From contig MCFE01000435.1 of assembly GCA_002104905.1 (NCBI GenBank), forward strand, positions 1 through 64,000: a DNA stretch of 64,000 nucleotides, in the 5' to 3' direction. The notes beneath the pieces are model-generated. The model searched no databases. It had not been told where the DNA came from and was given only the letters and a program-made list of their open reading frames with translations. Position 1 is the stretch's first letter. Each line of letters starts with the position of its first letter. This stretch comes from Basidiobolus meristosporus CBS 931.73. Taxonomy: Eukaryota; Fungi; Basidiobolomycota. This document shows positions 660 through 63,341 of this stretch, in pieces. The translations under genes and the position numbers were made by a program.

Positions 660-2880
660 AAAGTAAGCATAGTATTCAGGCAGATGAAAATATAGCAAAT
701 GCAGTACCTTTAATTGAAGTCCAGCAAGTGGCTGTTATAGCACCACCAATGCCTGTAATAGCAAGTATGCTGTCAGCTCAAACTAAAGCATTGGTAACAC
801 AAACAGGTAGAATGGCTGATAGAACAGATGCTATGGCCCAGAGAAGTCAGAAAATTTCCAAGAAACAGGTTGAGTGGAGAATATGTGTAGAGAGCAAAGC
901 ATCATCAAGTTGCTAGGAGATTGCTGGCAAGGGACAAGCAAGAAAAGTCTGATGCATCAGTGCAGCATTTATCAGGGAGATAATGAACTACTATACAACA
1001 AACATTCAGTAATATAGCGGTGATAAAGGTATAGGTAAAGAGAGAAAAGCCCACCCAAGCCAGAAACAGGAAAGCATGGGAAAATTTAAGCAGCATACAC
1101 TAATATACTCTGTCAGCCAAAACAAGCTGAATTCCATAAGAGCCAGGCAGAGTTATCAAGAGGAAGCTGTTGTTTTCTTACAGGTCAGAATTGGAGCCAT
1201 TGGGCCACACTCTGAAGTTACCATACAGTGCCAGTAAGGGACAAGCAGGTGAAAACAGAGGCATCAGGGTGGTACTTATGAAGGAGAGAATGTAGTTGGA
1301 TATAACAAGCAGTCAGGCAAGGTAGCAGTGAAACACCTGGCAAAGATAAAGGAAAGGTAAAGCAAGTAAATTCTACCAAGCAGAGCAAGTATAGGCATAA
1401 GCCAGCAACAGGTTCAATCCCCAAATAGCCAAGAAGGGTTACTATGAAGACAGCTTTTGTCTTTACAATAGTTAGAAGTGCAGCCAGTTGAGCTACATTT
1501 CATCAAGGCCAATAAGCTTGCAGAGGAAGGCAATTTATCAGTCACAGCCTTCTGGTCCTCTATTGTAGACTGAGTGGAGACCTTACTGTCATAAAAGCAA
1601 TAACACTAAGAACTCAAAAGACTATCATAATAGACTAGTTCTATTTGATGGAGCCATATTGTGCCATATGTGCCAAATGATGATAAAGTGTGCCTACAAG
1701 GCCAAGTGGACCTATCTTTGATCATGGCATGGAAAACGTATCCATCATCCTCATACAAATCAGCCCCTGTGCTGGACTCATTGTGCTAGAGAAAATCCAT
1801 TTTGCCCTTCTTGTTGGGATCAACATTATTCATGATATATAAGAGCACAGAAGTACTGAAGAGACACATCTGGTACTCAATATTCATGGCACTCTGAGTC
1901 TAGCTCCTGAGGTTTGCAACATCTCACAAAAATTTGTGGCCCTATATTGGTCCCTAGGTACTATCCAGCACTGTGAGTACTCTACATGGGTTTTTTTAGG
2001 GCAAATACTTAACTATTGTGCCAGATACAACTAGTTGACTAAGATAGTGCCATGCATTTTTGTAACATGTGATAAGCCACAGGAGCTAGATTCAGAGTGC
2101 CATAGGTATTGAGTCTAGAAGCATGTGTTCCGTACTTCTGACCTCATACACATTATGCACAACATTGATCCCAAAAAATCATCAAATATGAATTTTCCCT
2201 AGCACAAAGGATGAAACACAAGGGCAGCATTGCATTATGATGAAGAACTATGCTCCACACTCTGTGGCTAAGTTTAAGCCTGCTTTACCTGTCTGGCACA
2301 CAATGGTAATATTTGTCTCACATTGCTCAATGTGGCAATATCCAACAAAACAGGTCCAATGCCTGCTGAGAAACTTTGGGGCAATAATAAGCACAGCAGA
2401 TCCCACTGACAGATAAAGTAACCATGTCAAGAGTTCAAAAGGCGGTCACAATGCCTTTGGTAGAATTTTAGAACATAAATAGGTACACCAGGTGGTTGCA
2501 GCAATTTTTCAAGTGCAGTCCTCCAGAAAACATACTAGAATATTACAAGGATGTAATGCATAGACTAGCATATGAGATATTAAACTTTGCAGGGCCAGCT
2601 GAATACCAGGACATGTGGGAGTCAGTGAATGAACAGTTGAACAAGGCTGTAGGGTTCCTGCTGCAGTCATGGAAAATGGAAGTCATAGTAGAAATACTTA
2701 TTCAATGGTCAATTGAAATGGAGCTACTTGTTGAGTGTGGGATTAGGCTAAATGTTAGTGTTTGGCATAGGGACTTATATAGGTTAATTCATTTGGCAAT
2801 TGAGGTTCAACTGAAGCTTCAATGGATATAAATTGATTGTATTTATGAAAAGTACAAGAAACGTTCACGTCAGATGGCAT
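660..2880 (+). pseudogene. Decayed ORF2 fragment of the EnSpm-like element, interrupted by the MITE
   Basis: ORF pieces (APPMPVIASMLSAQTKAL; EWSIEMELLVECGIRLNVSVWHRDLYRLIHLAIEVQLKLQW) match ORF2 of the copies at 12673 and 23588; many stops. Confidence 0.7.
1632..2357. mobile_element. 726-bp foldback MITE with PHIS-type termini, TSD AAT
   Basis: AAT|AGACTAGTTCTATTTG...CAACAAAACAGGTCC|AAT. The host sequence rejoins cleanly when compared with 17301-17350. Arms ~1632-1975 and ~2040-2357 are diverged inverted copies. Confidence 0.75.
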
Positions 2881-4743
2881 GCATTTTTATGACAAGTTAT
2901 AAACCTCTGCAGCTGGATTCATGATGCTATGGACATTTAGTACCAAATGCATCCTTCAGATCTTTTATACTCTTACAGATAGTCTTTAACCCCACTTCCA
3001 AAATTGGTCAAAAGTTGTATTTCCTTCAGTGCATTTCCACTGGAGTATGTCTAGTATTATTGCTTCAAACAAGGACCTCAAATAGCACAACATCACAAGC
3101 AAGTATTAAGTCATTTCCCAATATAAAAGTAGAGGGAATGGTAAAGTGTTTGAAATACTATAACAGTACCCAATGATGAAGTCATTATAATATCTTATCA
3201 CAGCATGGGAAGGAGAGACTTTATTATAAATGCTAATCCCTAAACATCAAAGAAACTGAGGTTCCATGAAGCTGTTATGTGCATTGATGAAGAGTGAGCT
3301 AGTATTGAAGAGGCTGTAGGATGTAGAGCATGCCATCACCCTAAGGTGAGTATACCAAAGGACCATTAGGAATTTGAGGCCAAGCCAAATGAGCTTGAGC
3401 TGTTCCATGAGTATTATCATGGATTCAATCAAGGCATCAAATTTTTGGCCAGCATTGACATCCTAAGAGAATATCTCAAGAGTAACAACAACAGCCAAAG
3501 GTACAACAACCATGGTGGCCTGGCTGGAAACCAGTGGCAATAAAGCATTGGGCAGCTAGAAGAGTGTTTGCAAGTAAGCTGGCAGAAAAAGATGCACCAG
3601 CGCAGCATCAATTAAGGGAAGAATACAGTTCAACTCAAGATGTACTCAGTCAAAGTAGCAGTGAAAGACCTGGCAGTAATAGAATATGGTAGCTCCCTCT
3701 GGAGCAACTCTAAGAACATCACCTTTTCACACAGATAATGTATGGAAGTCAGCATGCAATTGCGGAAAGGTTGGCAAGCTATAAGCCATTGGCCAGAATA
3801 TGGAGTTAACTGGAGACCAGAGATACTTAACATGGGGGTATCTGTTAGAGCAAAGGCTCTCCACTGCAAGCAATGCATTTGCTTTTCAACAATATCCCTA
3901 TATCTATGATCAAGTTATACATTGGGGACTAAAGGCAAATGAGCCCTGTGAGCTACTGGAGAAATCTGAAAGAGTTTGCAAAATATTACCAAGTAACTAC
4001 TAGACTTGTTCCATTGTACTGTGCCAGGGTGTGCAGCACAATCCGCGGCCTCCAAGAACAATTGGGTGCAATATTGTAGCTACCAGTAGGCAGGATTGCT
4101 CTTGGACAATTTTGCAACATGTGAGACAATCTTGCACGCTATGGCACAATCCGACACAATGAGGTTGGCACAAATGATTGCACCCACTTGTAATGTTTGC
4201 ATCATGTGCACAATTGGATACTGCTATTATGGTAGGTCAAATCTGGTATTTGGTTATGTTTCTTTAATGTAAATGGAAAAAATGCGTATCACACTATAAA
4301 CTACACTGATACTTACCATTTTGGCTACCATCACTCCAATTGGATGGTATCTTAGTGGCTAATTGGTCCAGAAGTATCCTGAAGCTTTCAGCGCCCAATT
4401 GGCTCTTTGATCAATACACAAGCTACCTGATTTGCCATCAAATATCCCATTTTGCCCATTAAGCAAGTAAATCCCTGATCCTAGTGATTGGACAAGGTGT
4501 CATAGCTAGCATGCAACCTATTGTATGGGTGCAATCAGATCAAATGGCTGCACTGGTGCCACAGATGATATATGCTTATACATGGTGTTTATTTATAGGG
4601 GTCCTGTCTTAAATGCAAGATGACCCTAATATTGCTTATATCAAAAATTTAGTGAATACTGATTTGTGATGGCTTGATGCGGATAGCAAAAGAAAATGCA
4701 TTGTTTGGATCTTTACAAATAATAGCAATGCAATGCAATTGCA

Positions 4744-10379: not shown

Positions 10380-12153
10380 CTCCTCATCAGAAAAAATGTC
10401 ATACAAACTTATTATATCCTCCCATTATTTCTCTGACAACATCTCTTGCAAATTTATTCCAATTCCCTGATGCAATTTGCACAATACTCTCCCTGGACTC
10501 TACATGTCAATACTGACGTATACAAACTGGCTCAAGGTTTTTGTTGCAAAGGTAGCTCCAAATGTCAACAAAAACCATGGAAATACTTATTTGGCACCTG
10601 CATCTGCTTCTGCCATGAATAACTCCTTAATATCCACATAGAACTTTTTGGTATTCAGCCAATACATTCCTCTCCATGTTGGATTCTAGTCCCCTTTATA
10701 GGTGCATTCTGGCTCTGGTTTGTGTGGACTCTGTATTGAGTGGTTTAGTAATTGGCTTGTAACCAAGAGAAATGCTGCATACTTTGGTAGAGCTTTGCTA
10801 GTAAAAGTTAGTTACTTGTTGCACCCATCCCAGCTTTGCATAACTTAGCTGATTACCCATGCATTGGTGTCTCCATGTGCACATCTGTCCTCAGTATTTT
10901 CAAACTCTTCCTGGCTGTCTTCCATGTGCCAACTCATCTTGATGAGATTGGGATGTAGTAGTACCTGCACCTTGACTTGTCTTCCTATCTCCCTGCACAT
11001 CCACTCCAAAGGAAACTCCCAAAAGGTGAAGCAAGGTCCAATATTCACCGCACACAATGCAAGATGGAGTGGAGAATGGATACAGTAGCAGCCTAGATCT
11101 ACATGTTCAACTTTATATTTGTAGAATAGCTGCTCAAATCCCTTCACAAACTCATTGCACAACAACTGTAGATGCATCAAGTTGGCATTGATGATCTGCT
11201 TTTGGAAATGTACTCCTGCAATGTCTGCATATGACTCCCAAGGCTTCCAATGTACTCTTGGTAGGAATGGCTTCAGAACACCACTTGAATAAATACATAT
11301 TGAGTTCCTCCAGTCCTTGCACTTGTAATGTTGCATATGTGTATGAGTGTTGATTGAAGCCTGTGAGAAGTACTTAGGGTAACAGATACTTGGTGATATC
11401 TTGCCAACCCTTTCAGATTCCTCCAGTATCTTAAAGGGCTCATTTAGTATGAGTTCCCCCATACACAACTTGGTCATCAGTAAAGGCATACTGTTGCAAA
11501 GCAAGTGCATTACTCCCAATGGAGAACTTTTACTCCAACAATGACCCTCTTTCTCAAGTATTTTGGGCTTCCAATTAGTTCTGTAATTGGGCCAATGGCT
11601 TGTAGCTTGCCATCATTGACGCAATTGCATGCTAACTTCTGTATGTTCTCTCTGCCAAAGCTGTGGAACCAGAGCGTTTCAGCAGAAATACTTAATGAAT
11701 GGTGGATAGAGATGGAGCTACCTGTTGAGTGTTGGGTTGGGCTTAATGTTAGTGTGGGGTATAGGGACTTTTATAGGTCAATACAATTGACAATGGAGGT
11801 ACAACTGAAGCTTCAATGGAAGTAAAGCAATTTGTATGCATCAAATGTAGGAGAAACAGTTGAGTCAGGCAGTAAGAAGTGTGAAAAGAGGCAATAGCTA
11901 ATCAGTGCACACAAGCATAGGAGGTGATAGAATGTCTGGGTTCAGTAAGTGCATGAATTGGCAGGGAACCAATCAAAAGTATCTCATTAATTGTTGTAAT
12001 GAGAATTTTTGACCAGGTTTTTTTAAAAGCTGGGGTGCAATTGTTTTTCAGCAGTCTCTGGATGGTGACCTGATGTGATTAGTACCTCTTAGTCACAGGA
12101 CTTTAACTTTGTGATGGCCTTTTGCTGGATCATTACAATGATTTCTCATATGG
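10380..12153 (-). mobile_element. Internally deleted EnSpm-like copy (transposase 3' part joined at ~11665 to the ORF2 end)
   Basis: ORF 10845-11519 is DUF4218-like (HLALCAVNIGPCFTFWEFPLEWMCREIG). Right terminus TTTCTCATATGG at 12153 resembles TTTTTCATAGGG. Left end not found. Confidence 0.65.
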
Positions 12154-24044: not shown

Positions 24045-26424
24045 TTATAGGTGCACTCCAGCTTTTGTTTGCGTGAATTCCATATCAAATGGTGTAGAAG
24101 TTGGCTTGTGACCTTCAGAAATCTGGCATATCTTGGTAGAGTTTTCCTGATAAAAACTGGTGGCTTGTTGTACCCCATCCACCTTTGCATTACTTAACTG
24201 ATTGCCCACACATTGAGGCTGCTTAGCTTCTAAATGCATAGGCATAGGTGTCTCCATGTGCACATTTGTCCTCATATTTTCAAACTCTTTCTGGCTGTCC
24301 TCCATGTGCCAACTCATCAGATTCATGATGGACTTGAAGGTAATATTCTTGATGAGATTGAAATATGATAGTACCTGCAACTTGACATGTCTTCCTATCT
24401 CCCCACACATCAGCTCCATAGGAAACTACCAAAAGGTGAAGCAAGGCCCAATATTATCCACATGCTGTGCAAGATGGAGTAGAAAATGGATACAGTAGCG
24501 GCAGAGATCTATGCATTTAGCTTTATATTTGTAGTATAGCCACTCCAATCCCATCACAAACTCCTCACACAACAGCTGTAGATGTATCAAGTTGGCATTG
24601 GTGATCTGCTTCTGGATATATTTTCCTTCAGTGTCCAAATATGACTCCCAATGCTTCCAATGTACTCTTAGTAGGAATGTCTCAAGAACTCCACTTGAAT
24701 AAATACATATCCAGTTCCACCAGTCTTTGCATTTGTATTGTTGCATATGCATATGAATATTAATTGGAGCCTGTGAGAAGTACTTAGGGTAGCAGATACT
24801 CTGTAATATCTTGCCAATTCTTTCAGATCTCTCTGGTATCTCAAAGGGCTCATTTAGCTTGAAATGCCCCATGTACAACTTGGTCATCAGTATAGGGATA
24901 TTGCTGAAAAGCAAATACATTGCTGCCAGTGTAAAGCTTTTGTTCCAACAGACACCCTCTATCTTGAGCATCTCTAGTTTCCAATTGATTCCATATTCTG
25001 GCCAATGGCTTACAGCTTGCCAACTTTGCTGCAATTGCATGATGAGTTATGTATGTTCTCTCTGTGGAAAGATGATGCTCTTAGTGCTGGTGTTTGGGTA
25101 TTAATAATGTGTGTGAGTTATGGTGTAAACCCCCTGGATCTCACCCATTTGACAGCAATGCCATCCATTGTGCCCAGAAAAACCTGCCATCTTGCTGATG
25201 GCTGGGGTATCCCAATGCAGATAGTAATATGCACTTTTACATGATGGTCATTTACCATTATCCCACTGGAAAGCATACAAGATTCATCCAGCAATGGATG
25301 CAGGTAGGTATCCAGGTTGGACGGTGATTTAGGCCCTGATACCAGTAAGACTACCATCAGATTATTGCTCTGATACTGTAAGATGGGTGGCAGATTCAGA
25401 TTGATGGGAATCAGTGGCTTACAGGATTTGCTGGTAGAGTACTTGTTTAATGAGAATCCATCAAGTGCTAAGGAAAATGCATGGTCATACATATCTTCAA
25501 AGTAGCCCTTCCTTCTTAGCTGTTTGTATTGTTTGCCATCAAATACATCTGATATGTTTGCGCTTGGTTAATACAGGGTGTAGTACTGTATAGCTTTGAA
25601 ATATTTGTTGGACTGCATCAGCTTCCTCAAATGGGGTATGACCAGAATATATCTGGAGTGTAAACAATGTTTTCCCTCAATGGTGGTGGATTCCTGACAA
25701 TCTGAACATGTTGCAATGGTAGATTTTTGGATGCAAATGCCATGCAACTGTTTACATATGCTGGAATCAGAACAGTCTCTGGATCATATGTTGCCAGCTG
25801 CATGACGGTAGTCCACTTGTACCATGTACATGGTAAGTTGCATACTGGTATGATTTTGGCAAGATGTAGTAATAAATCCTCAAAATCCCCATTACTAATA
25901 TTAGTGGAAACGTGCCACTTCTCTAGCCACAACATTACATCATTTACCAGTAGATGGAATACTGAGCTCACTTGGCTCAATAAAGTATCCTTGGCATTGG
26001 TTTCAACTGGTGCTCTCTCATTGCATATAGGGATTTGACCGGGCTTATATGTGGTACTGTTGTAAGGGGAGATAGGCTCAAAATCCAGCAGTGAACCTTC
26101 TTTGTCAGAGCTATCACTCTGTATGCCATATTCAGAAGGCTGAGGTGAGCCTAAAGGTGTAAGAAACTCACCTGACTCAGTTAGTGCAAGGTGACAAAGA
26201 TGGCCAGGTGCCAATATAGAAGTATCAACTGACCAGCAGGATAATGTTGAAACAGTAGTGATCAATGAATGGTCAAATATGACTTGGGTGGCAAAATACT
26301 GGCTATGATCCTTGTAATACTTCCTATGCTGTCTAAGTGCTTCATGGCTGAGAGGCTTGCCACAATAGCCCCATGGATTAATTTCTCTTCTCTTATGGTG
26401 TTGAGTCAAAGTAGTCTTGTCCAT
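24045..26424 (-). pseudogene. EnSpm/CACTA transposase (Transposase_21 + DUF4218 type), frameshifted
   Basis: LALDGFSLNKYSTSKS..LNLPP..SGPKSPSNLDTYLHPLLDE and HLAQHVDNIGPCFTFW..ELMCG motifs. Confidence 0.85.
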
Positions 26425-32727: not shown

Positions 32728-35700
32728 TGTTGTAAGAGTCTTGGAGATATTGGAAGTGATTGGGAGTACAAGTAGATTATGTGGTTTCACTTAATGATCT
32801 ATTGAATGTAAAAGTAGTATTTTTACTTTTACATGATCTAGGCATAAACACCATGAAGAATAGGTTTAAGAAGGTCCCAAGAACATGTGTCTAAAGTTTG
32901 GAGCTGTTTGAGCAACCTATCCAATATTTATGTTCTGGATACCTGATATTTTAGTGAAAATATTCTAAGTAAATCCCAACAAGGATTTTGGTCAGTATTC
33001 TCTAGGATTTGGAGGTAATGATCTAAGTGACCATGTTTGGTCAATATTTAGGTGGAATTACAAGCTTTTACAACACTCCCACTCAACTAAATGCACTTAC
33101 TTGCTAGTCCCAATTTTGACCTAAGATATTCCAACTTGTCTCTAGCTAATGGTTTAGTAAATATGTCTACAGTCATTTTATCTATATGACAGTAAGCTAA
33201 CTTAACTAAGTTATGTTCTATAACTTGACATATGAAAAGATGTCTAATATCTATGTGCTTAGTTCTAGTATAAAAGGTTGGATTTTTACTTAATTGTATA
33301 CATCCTTGATTATCTTGAAATAATGTAATAGGTGTTTTTTGACATAAGCCTAGATCTTTAAAAAGCTTCCTTAACCACATTGCTTCTTTTGCTACTTAAC
33401 AGACTGCCATATACTCTGCCTCTCTGGTAGAAAGTGCTATGGTTGGTTGCTTTCTCAATTTCATGAAATTTCTCCTTCACAGTAAAGAAAGGTGTATCCT
33501 ATGGTGGATCCTATGTCCTCATATTTCATCCCCAATCAGCATCAGGGTATCCCACAAGATTCTGTTCTGAATCATTATAGGTGTATCTTAAGCAGATATC
33601 AGCAGTTCCTTTTAGGTATCTAAAGATATACTCTACTGCTGCAATATGATCAGATCCATAGTTCTGATTATGCTGGGTACAACCCTCACTGAATATGAGA
33701 TATCTGGATGTTCTCCAAGAGTGCTATACTTCAGACTGCCAATCATGGGCTAATAAGGAAAGCCAGGGCTTTCAGATGGCACCAAGCTATCTTGATTTGG
33801 TTGAGTTTTGACCAAGTCAAGGTTTGTCTCCAATGGGATAGCTGCCAGTTTACAGCCTTCCATATGGCACTTCTTCAGTATGTCTTGAATATACTTGGAT
33901 TGGATTAGGGGGATATTCTGGGCACTCCTGTTTATGGAGAACTTTATCTCTAAGTAGTAACCAAGTTCTCCTAGATTGGACAAATTTAACTCTTTTGATA
34001 GGCTGGATTTAGTCTCTTCCAATGTCTTGAGGTTATTGGTGGCTATAATAAGATACTCCACATATAGAGCTAATAGAACTGGATTTGCTCTATCTGGCTT
34101 ATAGTAAATACTATAGTCAGCATTACTACTTCTCAAACTCAAAGATTCCAAATAAAAATCTATTTACAATTGCAGGCACATGGCAATTGTTTGAATCCAT
34201 ATAGTGACTTTTTCAGCTTGTAGACCAAATGGGGGTTATCTTGGTCAACAAACCCATCTGGCTGGTTCATATACATGTCCTCATCAAGTTCTCCATTCAA
34301 GAATGTAGCTTTTGCATCCATTTGATGAACAAAAATTTATACTTGGCTGCAATAGCCAATATTAATCTGATGGAATTAAACTTGGCTACCAGTGCAATGG
34401 TCTCAGTATAGTCAAGTCCATTTGTTTGAAAGTATCCTTTGGCCACAAGTCTTCCTTTGTATCCTTCAATTGTGCCATCAGCCTTGTATCTTGTCTTAAA
34501 GACCGATCTGCATCCAATTGATTTTTTGTTAATTAGTAATTTGAATAAGTCCTAAGTTTGATTTTCCATTAGGGCCTCATATTCCTCAGTCATTACAAAT
34601 CTGCAAAACCTTGTCTGAAGGCTATTTAGGGCCTCTTTTATAATCTGGGGTTCATCAATATGAACTGAATGGGCATAGGCTAAGTTTTTACCCTCTTTGA
34701 TACAGAAATTGAGTCTATTTTTTGTTCAGTTGGATCTCCAGGCATTTGATACTGGAATGATCACTTCTGGGATATTACTGGGCACTGCTTCAGGCTGAGC
34801 CATGGTTGCAGAGTCCTCTGGTGTGAAAAGATTTTCATTGTTTTGCTCTGATTTAATTCTGAGAATTGGTGGACTTGATATCAGATTTTTGTCATCATTG
34901 GAGGTCATTTTTTGTGAAAATTTAAATTTTCATCAAACAACACATCTCTGAACTTGCTCAACTTTGTTGCTTTGGTGTTGTAGAGTCTGTATGCTTTGCT
35001 TGCATTGCAGTAACCCAAAAATATTCATTTTACACTTTTTAGCCCAAATTTTGACTGATTTCCAGGCATAAACTATATACCCAAATATTCTTAGATGTTC
35101 TACACTGGGTCTGTATCCAAACCATGCCTCAGATGAAGTAGAATCACATAGTATTCTGTTAAAATGCCTATTTTTAAGGTATACAGCTGTGGCAACTGAT
35201 TCCACCCAAAATCATGGGATAAATTTTGCATAGGTCCACACAGATCTGAGTGAGTTAGATCTAATTTTTTCTTAGTTTTGATTAACCCAGAGCTCTTAAA
35301 CAGTTATCTGGCTTGTTTACCATATATGCAGGCTTCATGGTGCTCCAAATTAACAGGGGGATCAGTTTTTACTCCAGGAATTTGCTGATCTTTGATCATT
35401 TTGTGCAAATAATGAAAATTGATGTGTCCAAATCTCCTGTGACAAAGCATTAGTGTTTCTTCATTTAAAGTTACTTATATTGGCTTCCAGATATGATGGA
35501 ATACAAGTCAACATATACAGATTCTGATCTCTAATACCCAAAGCAATATGAGGACCATTTTGACTAGTGATCCTGAATCCAAAATTGTCAAAGCAGTGAC
35601 TAAGTCCTACTGCTGTGGCCTTGCTTACAGATAGTAGGTTCTTGGCTATTTCTGGTACATAGAGTACCTCTTGGAAGTCAGTGTATGGCTTCCTTTGCTG

Positions 35701-39333: not shown

Positions 39334-40968
39334 ATGCATTTCTCTCTTAAGCTTCTTGCCAGCCTTGCTGCCGCAATCGTCGTCGCTGCCGACGGATCGG
39401 TGGCCTTGAAACCCACCGGTACCGACATAGTTTCGGAGAGCCCAGTGACCGCCGTTACGGAATTTCCCACCCTTGAACCCGGACCCGTTATCCCTACCTC
39501 CATCAGCCTCTCGACTTCCCTCATTACAGAATCCGAAAAGAGTACTTCTGAGAAAGAAACAGAAACCGAGAGCAAGAGTTCTACCGAAACTGACAAATCC
39601 ACTGAATCTAAGCCTACTGAGGTCAGCACCACTACTAGTGACAAGTCTACTGAGAGTCACAAGCCCACCGAGACCGTGAAGCCCACCACCAGTGTCGAAT
39701 CTACTGAGAGCCACAAGCCCACCGAGACCGTGAAGCCCACCACCAGTGTCGAATCTACTGAGAGCCACAAGCCCACTGAAGCCGAGACCGACAAATCCAC
39801 CGAATCTCACAAGCCTACTGAGACCGTCAAGCCCACCACCACTGAGAGTCATAAGCCAACCGATTCTGACAAGCACTCTTCCACTGATGCTACTGAGACC
39901 GATAAGTCTACCGAGTCTCACAAGCCTACCGAGACTGAGACCGATAAGTCCAGTGAATCTCACAAGCCCACTGTGACCGTGACCGACAAGTCCAGCGAAT
40001 CTCACAAGCCCACCGACACCGTGACCGTGACCGACAAGTCCAGCGAATCTCACAAGCCTACCGAGACCGTGACTGACAAGTCCAGCGAATCTCACAAGCC
40101 TACTGAGACTGTGACCGACAAGTCCAGTGAGTCTCATAAACCCACCACCACCGACAAGTCCACCGAAAGTCACAAGTCTACCGAGACCACTACTGACAAG
40201 TCTAGCGAATCTCACAAGCCTACTGAGACTGTGACCGACAAGTCCAGTGAATCTCACAAGCCTACCGAGACTGTGACCGACAAGTCCAGCGAATCTCATA
40301 AGCCTACCGAGACCGTCAAGACTACCACCAGCGACAAGACCACTGAATCACACAAGCCTTCGGAAACTGTCAAGCCCGACACCACTCACAAGGTCACTGA
40401 GACCAACGAGGTCACCACCACTGAGAAGGTCACCGTCACTGACCACATTACCCAGACCAAGGTGACCACCGCCACCAACCAGGTGACCGAAACCGTGAGC
40501 CCAGTCACCACCGGTAAGGAAACCGAGACCCACTTGACCACCACCACCCACAAGGTCACCGATACTCACAAGGCCACCACCACCGAGAAGCACACCGAAA
40601 CCCATCTGACCACCGCCACTCACAAGACCACCGAGACCCACATCACCACCGAGGCCCATGAAACTCACAAGCCTACTGTGAAGCCCACCAAGCCTCACAA
40701 GCCCACCGTCAAGCCCACCAAGACCCACAAGCCCACCGTCAAGCCCTGCGTCCCAGTGACCGTGACCGAAACCAAGACCGTGACCGTCACCGCGGGAGCC
40801 GAGCCCACGCACGAGACCTCCTGCGTCAACGGCACCTACAAGTGCGTCCACGGCGGAAAATCCACCAAGTTCACCGTCTGCGCCAACGGCCGAGAGGTGA
40901 CCCAATCCTGCGCACCCGGCACCGTGTGCAAACCATTCCAAGGGTCCATCATCTGTGACTGGGCCTAA
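39334..40968 (+). CDS. Secreted Thr/Ser/Glu/Lys/His-rich mucin-like protein with C-terminal CBM19-like chitin-binding module, 544 aa, single exon
   Basis: Hydrophobic N-terminus MHFSLKLLASLAAAIVVAA; 16 ESHK repeats; C-terminal CVNGTYKC...FTVCANG...QSCAPGTVC...IICDW Cys pattern. Confidence 0.85.
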   Translation: MHFSLKLLASLAAAIVVAADGSVALKPTGTDIVSESPVTAVTEFPTLEPGPVIPTSISLSTSLITESEKSTSEKETETESKSSTETDKSTESKPTEVSTTTSDKSTESHKPTETVKPTTSVESTESHKPTETVKPTTSVESTESHKPTEAETDKSTESHKPTETVKPTTTESHKPTDSDKHSSTDATETDKSTESHKPTETETDKSSESHKPTVTVTDKSSESHKPTDTVTVTDKSSESHKPTETVTDKSSESHKPTETVTDKSSESHKPTTTDKSTESHKSTETTTDKSSESHKPTETVTDKSSESHKPTETVTDKSSESHKPTETVKTTTSDKTTESHKPSETVKPDTTHKVTETNEVTTTEKVTVTDHITQTKVTTATNQVTETVSPVTTGKETETHLTTTTHKVTDTHKATTTEKHTETHLTTATHKTTETHITTEAHETHKPTVKPTKPHKPTVKPTKTHKPTVKPCVPVTVTETKTVTVTAGAEPTHETSCVNGTYKCVHGGKSTKFTVCANGREVTQSCAPGTVCKPFQGSIICDWA

Positions 40969-44408: not shown

Positions 44409-45341
44409 ATGAGAGCCGATATAGTAGTAGACATTGAGACCGAGAAGACCACCCAGAACTACCGTCTGGACACGGAGGACCCAGTCTTCGTGTTAACTCC
44501 TGTCCAGGTTCGTATCCGAAGCTTCGCCATGGGGCTTCGGTACAGATATCGCGAATACACCGCCGAGTTCGCTAGCATGGTCATCCTGATGGTGCTTGGT
44601 TTGGGGGTGATCCACACTTCCATCCTGTACCCGCACCAGCAGAACTTCTTTGGGATCAATTGGGGCTGGGGACTGGCCTTGACTATGGCGATCTATTCCA
44701 ACGCCGGGATGTCCGGGGCTCACCTGAACCCGGCAGTCACCCTGGCCCTTGCCATCTCTCGAGGGTTCCCCTGGGCCAAAGTCCCGGGCTACATCTTCAC
44801 CCAAACCCTTGGGGCGTTCTGTGCAGCTGGGATAGTGTACGGCGTCTACCATCGATCCCTGGACACGTTCGACGGCGGAATCCGTCAGGTGACTGGGGAG
44901 AAAGGGACGGCCGGACTCTATGCAGGCTACCCCCAGCCGTACCTCAGCAATGGCAACGCATTTCTCGTCGAGTTTCTTCTCACCTGCATCATGATGTTCA
45001 TCGTCCTGGCCATTGGAGACCGCCGGAATGCCACCCATTCGGCCATCATCCCACTGGCGATAGGGCTGATGTTAGTATGCATCGGAGTCACCATTGGCGG
45101 GCTCAATGGCTATTCCCTTAACCCGGCACGCGACATGGGCCCTCGGTTGTTCCTGCTGATCGCCGGGTGGGGGACAGAGGCCTTCAGCGCATTCCATTAT
45201 TACTTCTGGATACCTATGGTGGCACCCACACTAGGCGCCATAGTCGGGGCCATTCTCTTCGACTTCATCCACCTGGTAGATTCACCGGACCAGGAGTCCA
45301 GGGGAGAAAGCGACACAATGATTCAAAGACATCGTAGATGA
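44409..45341 (+). CDS. Aquaglyceroporin (MIP family), copy 1, 310 aa
   Basis: HLNPAVT and SLNPARD motifs (the D after NPAR marks the glyceroporin subfamily); hydrophobic helices. Confidence 0.95.
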   Translation: MRADIVVDIETEKTTQNYRLDTEDPVFVLTPVQVRIRSFAMGLRYRYREYTAEFASMVILMVLGLGVIHTSILYPHQQNFFGINWGWGLALTMAIYSNAGMSGAHLNPAVTLALAISRGFPWAKVPGYIFTQTLGAFCAAGIVYGVYHRSLDTFDGGIRQVTGEKGTAGLYAGYPQPYLSNGNAFLVEFLLTCIMMFIVLAIGDRRNATHSAIIPLAIGLMLVCIGVTIGGLNGYSLNPARDMGPRLFLLIAGWGTEAFSAFHYYFWIPMVAPTLGAIVGAILFDFIHLVDSPDQESRGESDTMIQRHRR

Positions 45342-47526: not shown

Positions 47527-48423
47527 ATGGGAGCCGATATAGCAGTAGACATTGAGACGGCAAAGACTACCAAGAACTACCGTCTGGACACGGAGGACCC
47601 GGTCTTCGTGCTAACCCCGGTTCAGATTCGCATTAGAAGCTTCGCCATGGGGCTTCGGTACAGGTATCGCGAATACACCGCCGAGTTCGCTAGCATGGTC
47701 ATCCTGATGGTGCTTGGTCTAGGGGTGAGCCACACCTCCACACTATACCCGCACCAGCAGAACTTCTTTGGGATCAATTGGGGCTGGGGACTGGCCTTGA
47801 CTATGGCGATCTATTCCAACGCCGGGATGTCCGGGGCTCACCTGAACCCGGCAGTCACCCTGGCCCTTGCCATCTCTCGAGGGTTCCCCTGGGCCAAAGT
47901 CCCGGGCTACATCTTCACCCAAACCCTTGGGGCGTTCTGTGCAGCTGGGATAGTGTACGGCGTCTACCATCAATCCCTGGACACGTTCGACGGCGGAATC
48001 CGTCAGGTGACTGGGGAGAAAGGGACGGCCGGACTCTATGCAGGCTACCCCCAGCCGTACCTCAGCAATGGCAACGCATTTCTCGTCGAGTTCCTTCTCA
48101 CCTGCATCATGATGTTCATCGTCCTGGCCATTGGAGACCACCGGAATGCCACCCATTCGGCCATCATCCCACTGGCGATAGGGCTGATGTTAGTATGCAT
48201 CGGAGTCACCATTGGCGGGCTCAATGGCTATTCCCTTAACCCGGCACGCGACATGGGCCCTCGATTGTTCCTGCTGATCGCCGGGTGGGGGACAGAGGCC
48301 TTCAGCGCATTCCATTATTACTTCTGGATACCTATGGTGGCACCCACACTAGGCGCCATAGTCGGGGCCATTCTCTTCGACTTCATCCACCTGGTAGATC
48401 CACCAGACCAGGAATCCAGATGA
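47527..48423 (+). CDS. Aquaglyceroporin (MIP family), copy 2, 298 aa
   Basis: Same NPA motifs; near-identical core to copy 1. Confidence 0.95.
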   Translation: MGADIAVDIETAKTTKNYRLDTEDPVFVLTPVQIRIRSFAMGLRYRYREYTAEFASMVILMVLGLGVSHTSTLYPHQQNFFGINWGWGLALTMAIYSNAGMSGAHLNPAVTLALAISRGFPWAKVPGYIFTQTLGAFCAAGIVYGVYHQSLDTFDGGIRQVTGEKGTAGLYAGYPQPYLSNGNAFLVEFLLTCIMMFIVLAIGDHRNATHSAIIPLAIGLMLVCIGVTIGGLNGYSLNPARDMGPRLFLLIAGWGTEAFSAFHYYFWIPMVAPTLGAIVGAILFDFIHLVDPPDQESR

Positions 48424-54298: not shown

Positions 54299-55697
54299 AT
54301 GTCAAGACCACACACTCCTCTGATCGAACCTGATGAATACTTCCGTACTCATGCGGCCCCCGAGGAGCTCGCTGTCAACGAGAAGGCCATGGAACTATTC
54401 GTGGCCAAGCATCGAGCTGCCGGTCGAAGGATCGCCGTGGTCACGGTAAATTGGCGGCTTCGTTGCCCCCGGTTTCTTCCCCAACCTCCGGCCATTTCTT
54501 CTTCTAAAGCCCACCTTGATTCTTTCGATGCTAGAGCGGTGGAACTACCGTGCCTTTGGAGAACCAGACCGTTCGCTTCATCGACAACTTCAGCGCCGGT
54601 ACCCGTGGCGCCACCTCTGCTGAATATCCTTTTTACCGTTTTCTGTAGCGCAAACTCCTGGAGAGGCTGCTCTGTCCTTGACCCTCGAAGATACGTATTT
54701 TTTAGAGTTGGGTTACGCCGTGATCTTCCTCCATCGCCAGTTCAGCCTGCAGCCCTATAGCAGACACTACACTCACTCCAAGAACTGCTTCCTGGACTAC
54801 ATGGGCTTGGGGCCTGATGGGCAGTTGACTGGTAGGGTTTATTTTTGCAAGGCTTTGCTCACGTGAACCGTTTATTCATGCCTCCCCTTACCAGTGGACT
54901 CGCAGTATAGCCAGAAGATGAAGGAGGTGCTGACCAAGTATCACAAGGTAAAGGAAACCCCGGGTGGTTGGTTCGGCATTATTGATACCAAGTCTACGTG
55001 GAAAATTCCAGGCGAAGCAAGAAGAGACCCTTCTGATGATCAGCTTTGTAACGGTGACGGATTATCTGTTCCACCTTCGAAGCGCGGCTTTCATCGTGGG
55101 CTCCATGGGAGAGAAGGCCCTTTTCTACCTCGCGGCAGCAGTCAGCGATTTCTTCATCCCCGCCGAGAAAATGGTCAGTAAAAATGCGCCTTACCACCGG
55201 ACGTCTCCTCAACAACAAACCATATTCTAGGTGGAGCACAAGATCCAATCAGACGGTGGTGGCCTGACGCTTACGATGGAGCAGGTCCCCAAGGTTCTCA
55301 AGCCATTGGTCACTAAATGGGCGTCCCAGAGCTTCATCATCTCATTCAAGGTAAGGTCCCACTCGCTGAGCAGACATCCACCATCACTGACCCATTCATC
55401 TTCTCTCAACAGCTCGAGACCGATCCAGAGATCCTGACTACGAAGGCTCGACGTGCGCTCAATCGCTATGGCCACAAGGTCGTGATTGGCAACCTCTTGA
55501 CCACGCGCAAGCAGATCGTCTGGTTCATCACCAATGACACCGAGGAGACCGTCACCTTGACCAACGAGCAGCTAGCGCAAGGAGTAGAGATAGAGAGCAA
55601 GATCGTGCCTAATCTGATCGAGAGACACACCGCATTCATCGAATCCAGTGGCAGATTGCTCTCGGTCTCGCCGAAGCAGACCAATCTTGGTGTATGA
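54299..55697 (+). CDS. CAB2: Phosphopantothenate-cysteine ligase (PPCS/Cab2), multi-exon, one intron U12-type
   Basis: [66 protein letters not shown]. Confidence 0.92.
54624..54694 (+). other. U12-type AT-AC minor-spliceosome intron (71 nt)
   Basis: 5' ATATCCTTTT, branch TCCTTGAC at 54675-54682, 3' AC; removal restores SAE|YFL in frame. Confidence 0.9.
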
Positions 55698-60833: not shown

Positions 60834-63341
60834 TTAGAAGATAAATTGGTTGTGGGCCATTGGCAATTCGGTGGCAGGAACACATGTCATGTGGACATCA
60901 TCGGCATACACTTCGTATGTCTCCGGATCAACTCTCATCTTTGGAAGCGCATCGTTAAGCTTCATGTCGGTCTTCTTGACGCTGCGGCAATTCTTGACGG
61001 CCTCGATGGTCTTGTTTAGGTTGTATCCCTTAACGACTCCCGAATCAACCGAGTCTTTACTGACGAGGGCTAGTGCACGTATACCCAAGCCGAACGAACC
61101 GAACATTTCACGGCCAATGATGGGCTCTGTGGTGGGGATCGATGCGTTGGCATCACCCATATTGGCCCAGGCAACAACTCCTCCTTTGATGACGATCTCA
61201 GGCTTCGTGCCAAAGAAAGCGGGGCTGTACATGACCAAATCGGCGTATTTTCCGGCCTCGATGGAGCCCAAAAGATGGCCACATCCGTGTGCAAGTGCCG
61301 GGTTAATGGTGTATTTGGCAACATATCGCCTGGCGCGGAAGTTGTCGTTCTCTTGCTTTCCTTTCTCGTTGGGGGCCGGCAAGTGGCCTCTCTGGACTTT
61401 CATCTTGTGGGCGGTTTTCCAAGTTCTGGAGATGACTTCGCCAATACGTCCCATAGCCTGGGAATCGGAGGATATGATGGAAATGGCCCCGATGTCGGTA
61501 AGAACATCTTCGGCGGCAATGGTTTCCGCACGAATTCTGGATTCGGCAAAGGCAACGTCTTCAGGGATGCGCTTGTCCAGATGATGGCAGACCATCAACA
61601 TGTCGACGTGCTCGTCTAATGTGTTGTTGGTGTACGGGCGGGTTGGACTAGTGGAGGAGGGGAGAACAGACGGCTCTCCGCAAACACGGATGATATCTGG
61701 GGCATGGCCACCACCGGCACCTTCCGAGTGATACGTGTGGATGGTTCTCCCATTAAACGCCTTGATGGAAGCTTCGACATAGCCGGACTCGTTCAGCGTG
61801 TCGGTGTGGATGGCTGCTTGGACATCGAACTCATCACACACGGTCAGACAGGCGTCAATGGCAGCAGGGGTAGATCCCCAATCCTCATGCAGCTTCAGCC
61901 CCAAAGCTCCCGCCCTTACTTGCTCTCTGATGGCATCTGTGTTGGAGCAATTACCCTTGCCCGTGAAGCCAATGTTGATGGGGAAGCTGTCGGTGGCTTG
62001 AAGCATGAACTTGATGTTGTATGCGCCTGGGGTACAGGTGGTAGCATTGGTGCCAGTGTTTGGTCCGGTGCCGCCACCGATCATGGTGGTGATTCCGGTG
62101 CCTAAGGCTTCGGCGCACAACTGTGGGCAAATGAAGTGGACGTGAGTATCGATTCCACCAGCAGTGAAGATGTGACCTTCCCCGGCAAGGGCTTCGGTCG
62201 AGGCGCCAACAATCATCCCTGGGGTCACACCGTCCATCACATCAGGATTGCCGGCTTTGCCAATACCGACGATCCTATCACCCTTGATACCAATATCAGC
62301 CTTGATGATGCCAGTGTAATCCACGATAATCGCGTTCGTGATCACCAGGTCGAGGCAGTCATCATCCGAGACGCCAGTATTCTGGCCCATGCCCTCACGC
62401 AGAACCTTGCCTCCGCCAAATTTACATTCATCGCCGTAAACGGTGTAATCCTTTTCGATTTCTATAAAGAGGTCCGTGTCACCAAGTCGGATCTTGTCAC
62501 CCACTGTAGGGCCGTACATGTCTACATACGTGGACCGCTCCAGGGCGAAGGGCTTCGGTGCAGGAAGTGGGGGCTGATCACGATGCTGGAAGCCTAGTTT
62601 TTTGCATTTCTCCACGATTTGTGCAGCCTTCGAGCGATCAACCTTTCCTGTGGCGATGTTGTTTCCTCCGGTGATGACCTGTTCGCCACCAATATCGACC
62701 ATTGTCACGGTCTTGGATTCGCCAGGCTCGAAGCGAACAGCCGTTCCGGCGGCAATATCCAACCGGCGGCCGTAAGCAACTCCACGGTCAAAGCACAGGT
62801 GGTCGTTGGTCTCAACAAAGTGGTAGTGGGAGCCGACCTGAATGGGTCGGTCTCCGTTGTTCGTTACCACCAAGGCCACACGCTCTCTGTCGGGCACAAG
62901 CGTGATCTTCTCCGTTCTGATCACGGTGCTGCCCGGAAGGCTGTGCTTGTCTATCTCGGTTGCAGGCGGGAAGATGTCCAACGACGGTATGGGCAAGTAG
63001 GAGCCATACAGCGCCAGCTCGAGATTGCCATCATCTGTACAAATGGGGTCGTGGACGGTAACCAAAAACGTGCTCTCCGCAAAGGTACCTTCGACCTGAA
63101 CTTCGTGGAGGGTAGCCAGCACGGCAGGTCGAACCTGTCGTCGCCCAAGGAGCTGCCGGCCGATATCCATCACCTCCGAGACAGAGTGCTTACCATCTCT
63201 CATCAGCTCGAGGGCTTGGGACGCGATAAGTGCACAGGCTTCGCTGTGGTTGAGTTGAACGCCCCTAGCTAGACGCATCTGAGCCAAGTAGCCAACTTGG
63301 TGAAGCATCAGCTTATCCATTTCTCTGGGAATTAACTTCAT
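60834..63341 (-). CDS. URE1: Urease, eukaryotic fused gamma-beta-alpha type, 835 aa, intronless
   Basis: [40 protein letters not shown] and SSDSQAMGR: nickel ligands and flap Cys present. Confidence 0.98.

What the first reader, a model, noticed from the sequence alone, without database searches (positions are those of the whole stretch)
54624..54694. U12-type AT-AC intron in the CoA-biosynthesis gene PPCS/CAB2
Seen: intron starts ATATCCTTTT, has branch site TCCTTGAC with its A 13 nt from the end, and ends AC. Excising these 71 nt converts GCT GA|G TAT into the conserved ATSAEYFL; no GT-AG pair does so, and retention shifts the frame. Known: these are the minor-spliceosome consensus signals; that machinery is lost in Dikarya and retained in only some early-diverging fungi, and minor introns can be rate-limiting. 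Inference: this genome has a working U11/U12 spliceosome, standard annotation probably mis-models this gene, and CoA synthesis may be gated by minor splicing.
Basis: partly seen in the sequence, partly recalled or inferred. Interest (0 to 1): 0.8.

Follow-up and report, generated by a model that had tools for sequence, protein, structure and literature searches.

The report
Mis-annotated minor-spliceosome intron in Basidiobolus PPCS
A 71-base AT-AC intron of the rare minor-spliceosome (U12) type very probably sits in the coenzyme-A pathway gene PPCS of the fungus Basidiobolus meristosporus. The public gene model splices it wrongly, but this fungus is already known to be rich in such introns, so it is one more member of a known kind.

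Summary
Window 54624-54694 starts ATATCCTTT, carries TCCTTGAC with its A 13 nt from the end, and ends AC. The composite pattern occurs once in the window and in 0 of 100 shuffles. Removing it joins GCT GA|G TAT into ...GATSAEYFLELGY.

The window is Basidiobolus meristosporus CBS 931.73, contig MCFE01000435.1. The public protein (336 aa) instead uses a weak GT-AG pair, 54638/54690, which inserts YPFYHT. Of 287 fetched orthologues with both anchor motifs, only this public model has that spacing.

An intron at the same codon position and phase, with the same signals, is present in:
- B. ranarum, Conidiobolus and Neocallimastix;
- Ambispora, Rhizophagus and Geosiphon;
- the sea anemone Nematostella, as a U12 GT-AG intron.

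The intron therefore probably predates the fungus-animal split. Most Glomeromycota models and both Basidiobolus models are mis-spliced here.

A working minor spliceosome in this fungus is already published (249 minor introns, the highest density in fungi), so that inference is not new. Gating of CoA synthesis by minor splicing has no support. No RNA reads could be obtained.

This scan already holds 17 notes on U12 AT-AC introns elsewhere in this genome. Two were followed up and reached the same verdict.

The parts
54299..55697 (+). PPCS / Cab2 gene (phosphopantothenate-cysteine ligase), ATG to stop; 7 exons, 330 aa in the corrected model
   Evidence: Public called gene has the same span, with Pfam DFP. 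Public protein P0389 matches human PPCS 1P9O/7EDZ at E 1e-77 to 4e-78.
54535..54623 (+). Exon 2, ends with GA of the split Glu codon; encodes [29 protein letters not shown](E)
   Evidence: Translation. Aligns without gaps to yeast Cab2 residues 86-114 and human PPCS residues 44-72.
54624..54694 (+). U12-type AT-AC intron, 71 nt, phase 2
   Evidence: Same position, phase and signals in 7 other fungi and, as the GT-AG subtype, in Nematostella.
54624..54632 (+). 5' splice-site box ATATCCTTT (expected U11/U6atac recognition sequence)
   Evidence: In the six-fungus alignment, columns 11-25 (GCTGA|ATATCCTTTT) are invariant while the intron interior is not conserved.
54675..54682 (+). Branch-site box TCCTTGAC (expected U12 pairing site), branch A at 54681, 13 nt from the 3' end
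   Evidence: TCCTTAAC / TCCTTAAT / TCCTTGAC lies at the equivalent place in B. ranarum, Ambispora, Conidiobolus and Nematostella.
54693..54694 (+). 3' terminal AC
   Evidence: Terminal AC is invariant in all six aligned fungal introns.
54695..54831 (+). Exon 3, begins with G completing GA|G (Glu), then [15 protein letters not shown]...
   Evidence: Translation. Its second residue F aligns to yeast Cab2 residue 117, which leaves exactly two residues (E, Y) after Cab2 residue 114.
54638..54690 (+). GT-AG 'intron' of the public gene model (GTTTTC...TCGAAG, 53 nt); judged wrong
   Evidence: It is the only canonical pair that gives 336 aa. The model built with it is identical to public protein P0389. 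It inserts YPFYHT where human PPCS shows a 6-residue gap, and it is the only one of 287 orthologues with that spacing. The sites are not conserved in B. ranarum.
54446..54534 (+). Intron 1, ordinary GT-AG (GTAAAT...CTAG), 89 nt
54832..54894 (+). Intron 3, ordinary GT-AG, 63 nt
54948..55011 (+). Intron 4, ordinary GT-AG, 64 nt
55174..55230 (+). Intron 5, ordinary GT-AG, 57 nt
55351..55412 (+). Intron 6, ordinary GT-AG, 62 nt

Best explanation
Window 54624-54694 is a genuine U12-dependent (minor-spliceosome) AT-AC intron in the second exon junction of the Basidiobolus meristosporus PPCS/Cab2 gene. By analogy with characterised U12 introns, U11 and later U6atac recognise the ATATCCTTT box. U12 pairs with TCCTTGAC and bulges the A at 54681. 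The 3' site is the AC 13 nt downstream. Excision joins 54623 to 54695 and produces a 330-aa enzyme with the universal ...[27 protein letters not shown]... motif. The intron is old: it sits at the same codon position and phase in Basidiobolus, Conidiobolus, Neocallimastix, Glomeromycotina and a cnidarian, so it most likely predates the fungus-animal split and was lost in many other fungal lines. What is shown here: the signals, the frame, the orthologue spacing, the positional conservation and the mis-annotation. What is inferred: the actual splicing by the minor spliceosome, since no RNA was seen.
For: Signals are at the stated coordinates. The composite pattern is unique in the window and found in 0 of 100 shuffles. 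Only this excision restores the motif. Exon 2 aligns to yeast Cab2 86-114 and exon 3 from residue 117, leaving exactly E and Y between them. Homologue proteins laid on the DNA stop at 54627 and resume at 54696 on the same residue. Of the fetched orthologues with both anchors, 286 have the 10-residue spacing of the AT-AC model, and the only one with 16 is the public model of this gene. Same-position AT-AC introns starting ATATCCTTTT and ending AC occur in B. ranarum (L008 1800-1878), Conidiobolus coronatus (L011 774-849), Neocallimastix lanati (L010 1154-1361), Ambispora leptoticha (L002 1833-1911), Rhizophagus irregularis (L005 1142-1217) and Geosiphon pyriformis (L006 1163-1269). All but Neocallimastix also have a U12-like branch box near the 3' end. 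The 5' box and terminal AC are invariant while the interior is unconserved. Nematostella has GTATCCTC...TCCTTGAC-12 nt-CAG at the same position (L009 2317-3292). The correctly spliced Neocallimastix protein also occurs in 57 index blocks whose longest contig is under 2 kb, although the gene spans 2.6 kb, which suggests cDNA-like contigs. Literature: B. meristosporus has 249 minor introns (PMC10639083), and a putative divergent U4atac is reported for it (PMC11347168).
Against: No minor snRNA gene lies in the 64-kb window, so the machinery rests on published surveys. An in-frame GT-AG alternative exists (54638/54690) and could be used at some level as a cryptic site.
Confidence: 0.9

Rival explanations
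1. The public gene model is right: a 53-nt U2-type GT-AG intron (54638-54690) is removed, and the enzyme carries a lineage-specific YPFYHT insertion.
For: It keeps the frame and gives the deposited 336-aa protein.
Against: The donor GTTTTC and acceptor GAAG are unlike the five other introns of the gene, which read GTAAAT/GTAGGG/GTAAAG/GTCAGT/GTAAGG ... YAG. The insertion falls in the most conserved motif, where human PPCS shows a 6-residue gap. It is unique among 287 orthologues. The sister species B. ranarum has no equivalent GT-AG pair, and its annotators chose a different one that deletes 13 conserved residues. The inserted YPF is simply the translation of ATATCCTTT, and the same SAEYPF/SAEYPL read-through appears in eight mis-modelled Glomeromycota proteins.
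Confidence: 0.04
2. Both junctions are used: minor splicing gives the active enzyme, and cryptic U2 splicing or retention gives inactive forms, so that PPCS output, and through it CoA synthesis, depends on minor-spliceosome activity.
For: The intron has been kept at this position from cnidarians to fungi. Retention would shift the frame, since 71 nt is not a multiple of 3. A cryptic in-frame GT-AG pair exists.
Against: No expression data were obtained here. The intron has been lost without replacement in Thamnocephalis, Bifiguratus and two intronless relatives, and, by established knowledge rather than any test here, in all Dikarya, so it is dispensable. In Rhizophagus, minor-intron retention differed only modestly between cell types, and the authors' overall reading is that neutral processes may explain much of minor-intron evolution (PMC10639083, section 35 and title).
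Confidence: 0.05
3. It is an AT-AC intron removed by the major (U2) spliceosome.
For: Rare U2-type AT-AC introns exist (established knowledge).
Against: By established knowledge, those introns lack the ATATCCTT box and the TCCTTRAC branch box close to the 3' end. Both are present here and conserved in seven species.
Confidence: 0.01

Closest known systems
U12-type (minor-spliceosome) AT-AC introns in general (Hall and Padgett 1994; Tarn and Steitz 1996, as cited in PMC10639083)
   Same: The 5' box /ATATCCTTT, the branch box TCCTTRAC 10-15 nt from the 3' end, the terminal AC and a non-zero phase.
   Different: Nothing in the signals differs. The intron is short (71 nt), as are all introns of this fungus.
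The published minor-intron complement of Basidiobolus meristosporus (249 introns, 0.554%, PMC10639083; 237 introns, PMC11347168)
   Same: Same genome and the same class of intron.
   Different: Those surveys classify annotated introns. Here the annotated intron is a GT-AG pair lying 14 nt inside the true 5' end, so this intron was probably not counted. That is an inference: the per-gene lists are not in the held supplements.
PPCS intron of Nematostella vectensis (L009 2317-3292)
   Same: Same codon (Glu of SAE|xFL), same phase 2, TCCTTGAC branch box 12 nt from the 3' site.
   Different: It is the GT-AG subtype (GTATCCTC...CAG), 976 nt long, and correctly annotated.
PPCS AT-AC introns of Conidiobolus coronatus and Neocallimastix lanati
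   Same: Same position, ATATCCTTTT start, AC end.
   Different: Their public models are spliced correctly. The Neocallimastix intron is 208 nt long and has no clear branch box near its 3' end.

Membership tests
U12-type (minor) spliceosomal intron | 5' splice site /RTATCCTTT directly at the exon end | tested here: met
   ATATCCTTT at 54624-54632.
U12-type (minor) spliceosomal intron | Branch box TTCCTTRAY about 8-20 nt upstream of the 3' splice site | tested here: met
   TCCTTGAC at 54675-54682, with the A 13 nt from the end. The composite pattern occurs in 0 of 100 shuffles.
U12-type (minor) spliceosomal intron | Termini AT-AC or GT-AG, with excision that preserves the reading frame and the conserved protein | tested here: met
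U12-type (minor) spliceosomal intron | Positional conservation with U12-type introns in other species | tested here: met
   Seven other fungi and Nematostella.
U12-type (minor) spliceosomal intron | Host genome encodes U11, U12, U4atac and U6atac | not testable with these tools
   Only the 64-kb window is readable, and its Rfam scan found none. Published: a putative divergent U4atac in B. meristosporus, and high-confidence U11, U12 and U6atac in several fungi of the zoopagomycote lineage (PMC11347168).
U12-type (minor) spliceosomal intron | Junction 54623/54695 present in mature RNA | not tested
Phosphopantothenate-cysteine ligase (PPCS / Cab2; Pfam DFP PF04127) | Full-length similarity to solved PPCS enzymes and the DFP domain | tested here: met
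   P0389 against human 7EDZ/1P9O, E 4e-78 and 1e-77, and against yeast Cab2 6AI8, E 3e-69. PF04127 is recorded on the called gene.

The most novel reading that the evidence does not exclude
The PPCS minor intron is kept at one codon from cnidarians to early-diverging fungi because it couples CoA biosynthesis to minor-spliceosome activity, through regulated retention or cryptic GT-AG use. On this reading it is more than a slowly decaying ancestral intron.
Probability: 0.05. Interest if true: 0.6.

Novelty: new member of a known kind. Interest (0 to 1): 0.3.

Why it matters
The finding has three practical consequences.

1. It corrects a gene model. The deposited B. meristosporus PPCS carries a spurious 6-residue insertion in its most conserved motif. 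The deposited B. ranarum protein lacks 13 conserved residues. About 17 of the 19 Glomeromycota PPCS models fetched are wrong at the same junction.

2. Annotation-based counts of minor introns in these fungi are probably underestimates, especially for the AT-AC subtype. This includes the record value for B. meristosporus.

3. It adds one well-documented case of a minor intron shared between fungi and animals, with an AT-AC to GT-AG subtype difference. That is useful for reconstructing ancestral minor-intron content.

It does not change what is known about the presence of the minor spliceosome in fungi.

Tried and rejected
- Rfam gathering scan of the window: no minor snRNA. The only hit is a spurious 5_ureB_sRNA match on the urease gene.
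- GTATCCTTT at 34432: no branch box and no coding context, so rejected as an intron.
- A second ATATCCTT in the Rhizophagus PPCS gene (L005 1728): it lies inside an ordinary GT-AG intron.
- Pfam on single exons: too short to score.
- First homologue search with P0072: it turned out to be an animal-like protein and returned mostly animals. The Basidiobolus proteins were reached only with an alignment of a homologue plus the exon peptides, each given by reference.
- Other in-frame excisions starting at 54624 or nearby (for example to 54682, or 54626-54690): they destroy the motif or end inside the branch box.
- Paper searches for PPCS or phosphopantothen* together with minor or U12 introns: no paper found. 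Per-gene intron lists are not in the held supplements.
- Joined model: the joined 330-aa model was never sent to a search tool. Searches were made exon by exon, by reference. The joined translation was computed only inside scripts, to count its length and compare it with P0389.

Full report
**Where the window comes from.** The 835-aa urease ORF of the window (60837-63341, minus strand) is found exactly once in the public collection. It lies on contig MCFE01000435.1 of assembly GCA_002104905.1. The protein later recovered for the gene in question is named 'DFP-domain-containing protein [Basidiobolus meristosporus CBS 931.73]' and sits on a contig of the same length, 75607. So the window is B. 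meristosporus, phylum Basidiobolomycota in the current NCBI taxonomy. The minor-intron papers list it under Zoopagomycota. Two earlier follow-up notes of this scan had said the same, and I verified it independently.

**The observation.** One search shows ATATCCTTTT at 54624-54633. TCCTTGAC lies at 54675-54682, with its A at 54681, 13 nt before the last base. The stretch ends in AC at 54693-54694 and is 71 nt long.
- Upstream, 54535-54621 translates to [29 protein letters not shown].
- Downstream, 54696-54830 translates to [21 protein letters not shown]....
- The two bases GA at 54622-54623 plus G at 54695 make the Glu codon between them. This is a phase-2 intron.
- Each short motif alone is no more frequent than chance. 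The composite ATATCCTT-N30-60-TCCTTRAC-N6-16-AC occurs once in the window and in none of 100 shuffles.

**Gene model.** The gene runs from 54299 to 55697. With the AT-AC intron and five ordinary GT-AG introns (54446-54534, 54832-54894, 54948-55011, 55174-55230, 55351-55412) it gives an open frame of 330 codons.
- The gene is PPCS/Cab2. The public protein matches human PPCS (7EDZ, 1P9O) at E 4e-78 and 1e-77, and yeast Cab2 (6AI8) at 3e-69. It also carries Pfam DFP.
- The neighbours are FEN1 upstream and a zinc-cluster gene downstream. The order FEN1-PPCS-Zn_clus is the same in B. ranarum.

**Which junction is right.** GT at 54638 and AG at 54690 (53 nt) would insert YPFYHT between SAE and YFL. 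The public called gene has 336 residues, and the model built with that pair is identical, residue for residue, to public protein P0389. The deposited annotation therefore uses the GT-AG pair. Five lines of evidence say it is wrong.
1. Yeast Cab2 aligns to exon 2 over residues 86-114 and to exon 3 from residue 117. That leaves exactly two residues, E and Y, as in the AT-AC model.
2. Human PPCS aligned to P0389 shows a 6-residue gap exactly opposite ypfyht.
3. Homologues laid on the DNA by tblastn stop at 54627 and resume at 54696 on the same residue.
4. Of 287 fetched orthologues that hold both anchor motifs, 286 have 10 residues between RG and GY. The only one with 16 is P0389 itself.
5. The donor GTTTTC and acceptor GAAG are unlike the other five introns of the gene, and the pair is not conserved in the sister species.

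**Comparative evidence.** I fetched the PPCS loci of relatives and looked between the two exon peptides.

| Species (locus) | Intron at the SAE/YFL Glu codon | Signals | Public model |
|---|---|---|---|
| B. ranarum (L008) | 1800-1878, 79 nt | ATATCCTTTTT ... TCCTTAAC, 12 nt, AC | Wrong: a different GT-AG pair, 1775/1895, deletes [13 protein letters not shown] |
| Conidiobolus coronatus (L011) | 774-849 | ATATCCTTTT ... TCCTTAAT ... AC | Correct |
| Neocallimastix lanati (L010) | 1154-1361, 208 nt | ATATCCTTTT ... AC; no clear branch box near the 3' end | Correct |
| Ambispora leptoticha (L002) | 1833-1911 | ATATCCTTTT ... TTCCTTAAC ... AC | Wrong |
| Rhizophagus irregularis (L005) | 1142-1217 | ATATCCTTTT ... 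TCTTTAAC ... AC | Wrong |
| Geosiphon pyriformis (L006) | 1163-1269 | ATATCCTTTT ... TTCTTAAC ... AC | Wrong |
| Nematostella vectensis (L009) | 2317-3292, 976 nt | GTATCCTC ... TCCTTGAC, 12 nt, CAG (U12 GT-AG subtype) | Correct |
| Thamnocephalis sphaerospora (L007) | None | - | - |
| Bifiguratus adelaidae (L012) | None | - | - |
| Two intronless relatives of unknown origin (L003, L004) | None | - | - |

- For Neocallimastix, the exact spliced protein also occurs in 57 index blocks whose longest contig is under 2 kb, although the gene spans 2.6 kb. This suggests transcript-derived contigs.
- An alignment of the six short fungal introns shows GCTGA|ATATCCTTTT and the terminal AC invariant, a branch box in register, and no conservation in between. 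This is the pattern expected if the U12 signals are under selection and the interior is not.
- The simplest history is an ancestral minor intron present before fungi and animals split. It was kept in several early-diverging fungal lines, switched subtype on one side, and was lost elsewhere.

**Annotation consequences.** Of the 121 fungal orthologues checked, 21 failed the motif pattern.
- Two chytrid proteins were false negatives of my pattern, and one Podila protein differs at its N-terminus.
- The rest are almost all Glomeromycota models broken exactly here.
- Eight of them read ...SAEYPF or ...SAEYPL, which is simply the translation of GA|ATATCCTTT. Others start at MGYAVIFMHR.
- The surveys that reported 249 (PMC10639083) or 237 (PMC11347168) minor introns in B. 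meristosporus classify annotated introns. PMC10639083 itself notes that minor introns are unannotated by some pipelines. This intron was probably missed. That is an inference, because the per-gene lists are not in the held supplements.

**Mechanism.** By analogy with characterised U12 introns (established knowledge), recognition would run as follows.
- U11, then U6atac, recognise ATATCCTTT.
- U12 pairs with TCCTTGAC.
- The AC 13 nt downstream is chosen by distance.

The machinery itself could not be checked here. The window holds no snRNA gene and the rest of the genome is not readable. The literature reports a putative divergent U4atac in B. meristosporus, and high-confidence U11, U12 and U6atac for several fungi of its lineage (PMC11347168). 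It also reports complete absence of minor introns from Dikarya (PMC10639083).

**What remains untested.**
- The idea that CoA synthesis is gated by minor splicing has no support. The intron has been lost repeatedly without replacement. [quoted passage not shown]
- No paper in the searchable library links PPCS with minor introns.

**Verdict.** This is a real, textbook U12 AT-AC intron (confidence about 0.9 without RNA). It is ancient and mis-annotated in public records, but it lies in a fungus already known to be rich in minor introns. This scan holds 17 notes on such introns elsewhere in the genome, and two were followed up with the same conclusion. It is a new member of a known kind, of modest interest.

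Noticed in passing
window 62108-62402 (+): The Rfam gathering hit to 5_ureB_sRNA (101.5 bits) lies antisense inside the 835-aa eukaryotic urease ORF (60834-63341, minus strand). It most likely reflects urease coding-sequence conservation with Helicobacter ureB and not a fungal sRNA.
   Followed up: partly
window 1-40000 versus 40001-64000: G+C steps from about 0.40 in the first 40 kb to about 0.50 in the rest. The long ORFs in the low-GC part (39334-40968, 25627-26424, 10845-11519) have no Pfam match. This may be repeat or transposon-rich DNA.
   Followed up: no
window 44409-45341 (+) and 47527-48423 (+): Two tandem single-exon MIP/aquaporin genes (Pfam MIP, E about 2e-50 each), apparently a local duplication.
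   Followed up: no
L008 1775-1895 (B. ranarum); L002, L005, L006 (Glomeromycotina): Public PPCS models of B. ranarum, Ambispora, Rhizophagus, Geosiphon and at least eight further Glomeromycota species are mis-spliced at the same AT-AC intron. A SAEYPF or SAEYPL read-through string in a deposited protein marks the untranslated ATATCCTTT box.
   Followed up: yes
L010 1154-1361 (Neocallimastix lanati): The orthologous AT-AC intron is 208 nt and very AT-rich. Its only TCCTTAAT box lies about 75 nt from the 3' end, far outside the usual U12 distance, yet the spliced protein seems transcript-supported.
   Followed up: no
other pieces of the same genome (notes s1-190881 and s1-212436): Earlier notes describe a diverged U6-like gene with a shortened core, and a four-copy ~179-nt RNA family with an snRNA-type promoter. 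These could be U6atac and another minor snRNA, but I could not read those pieces.
   Followed up: no
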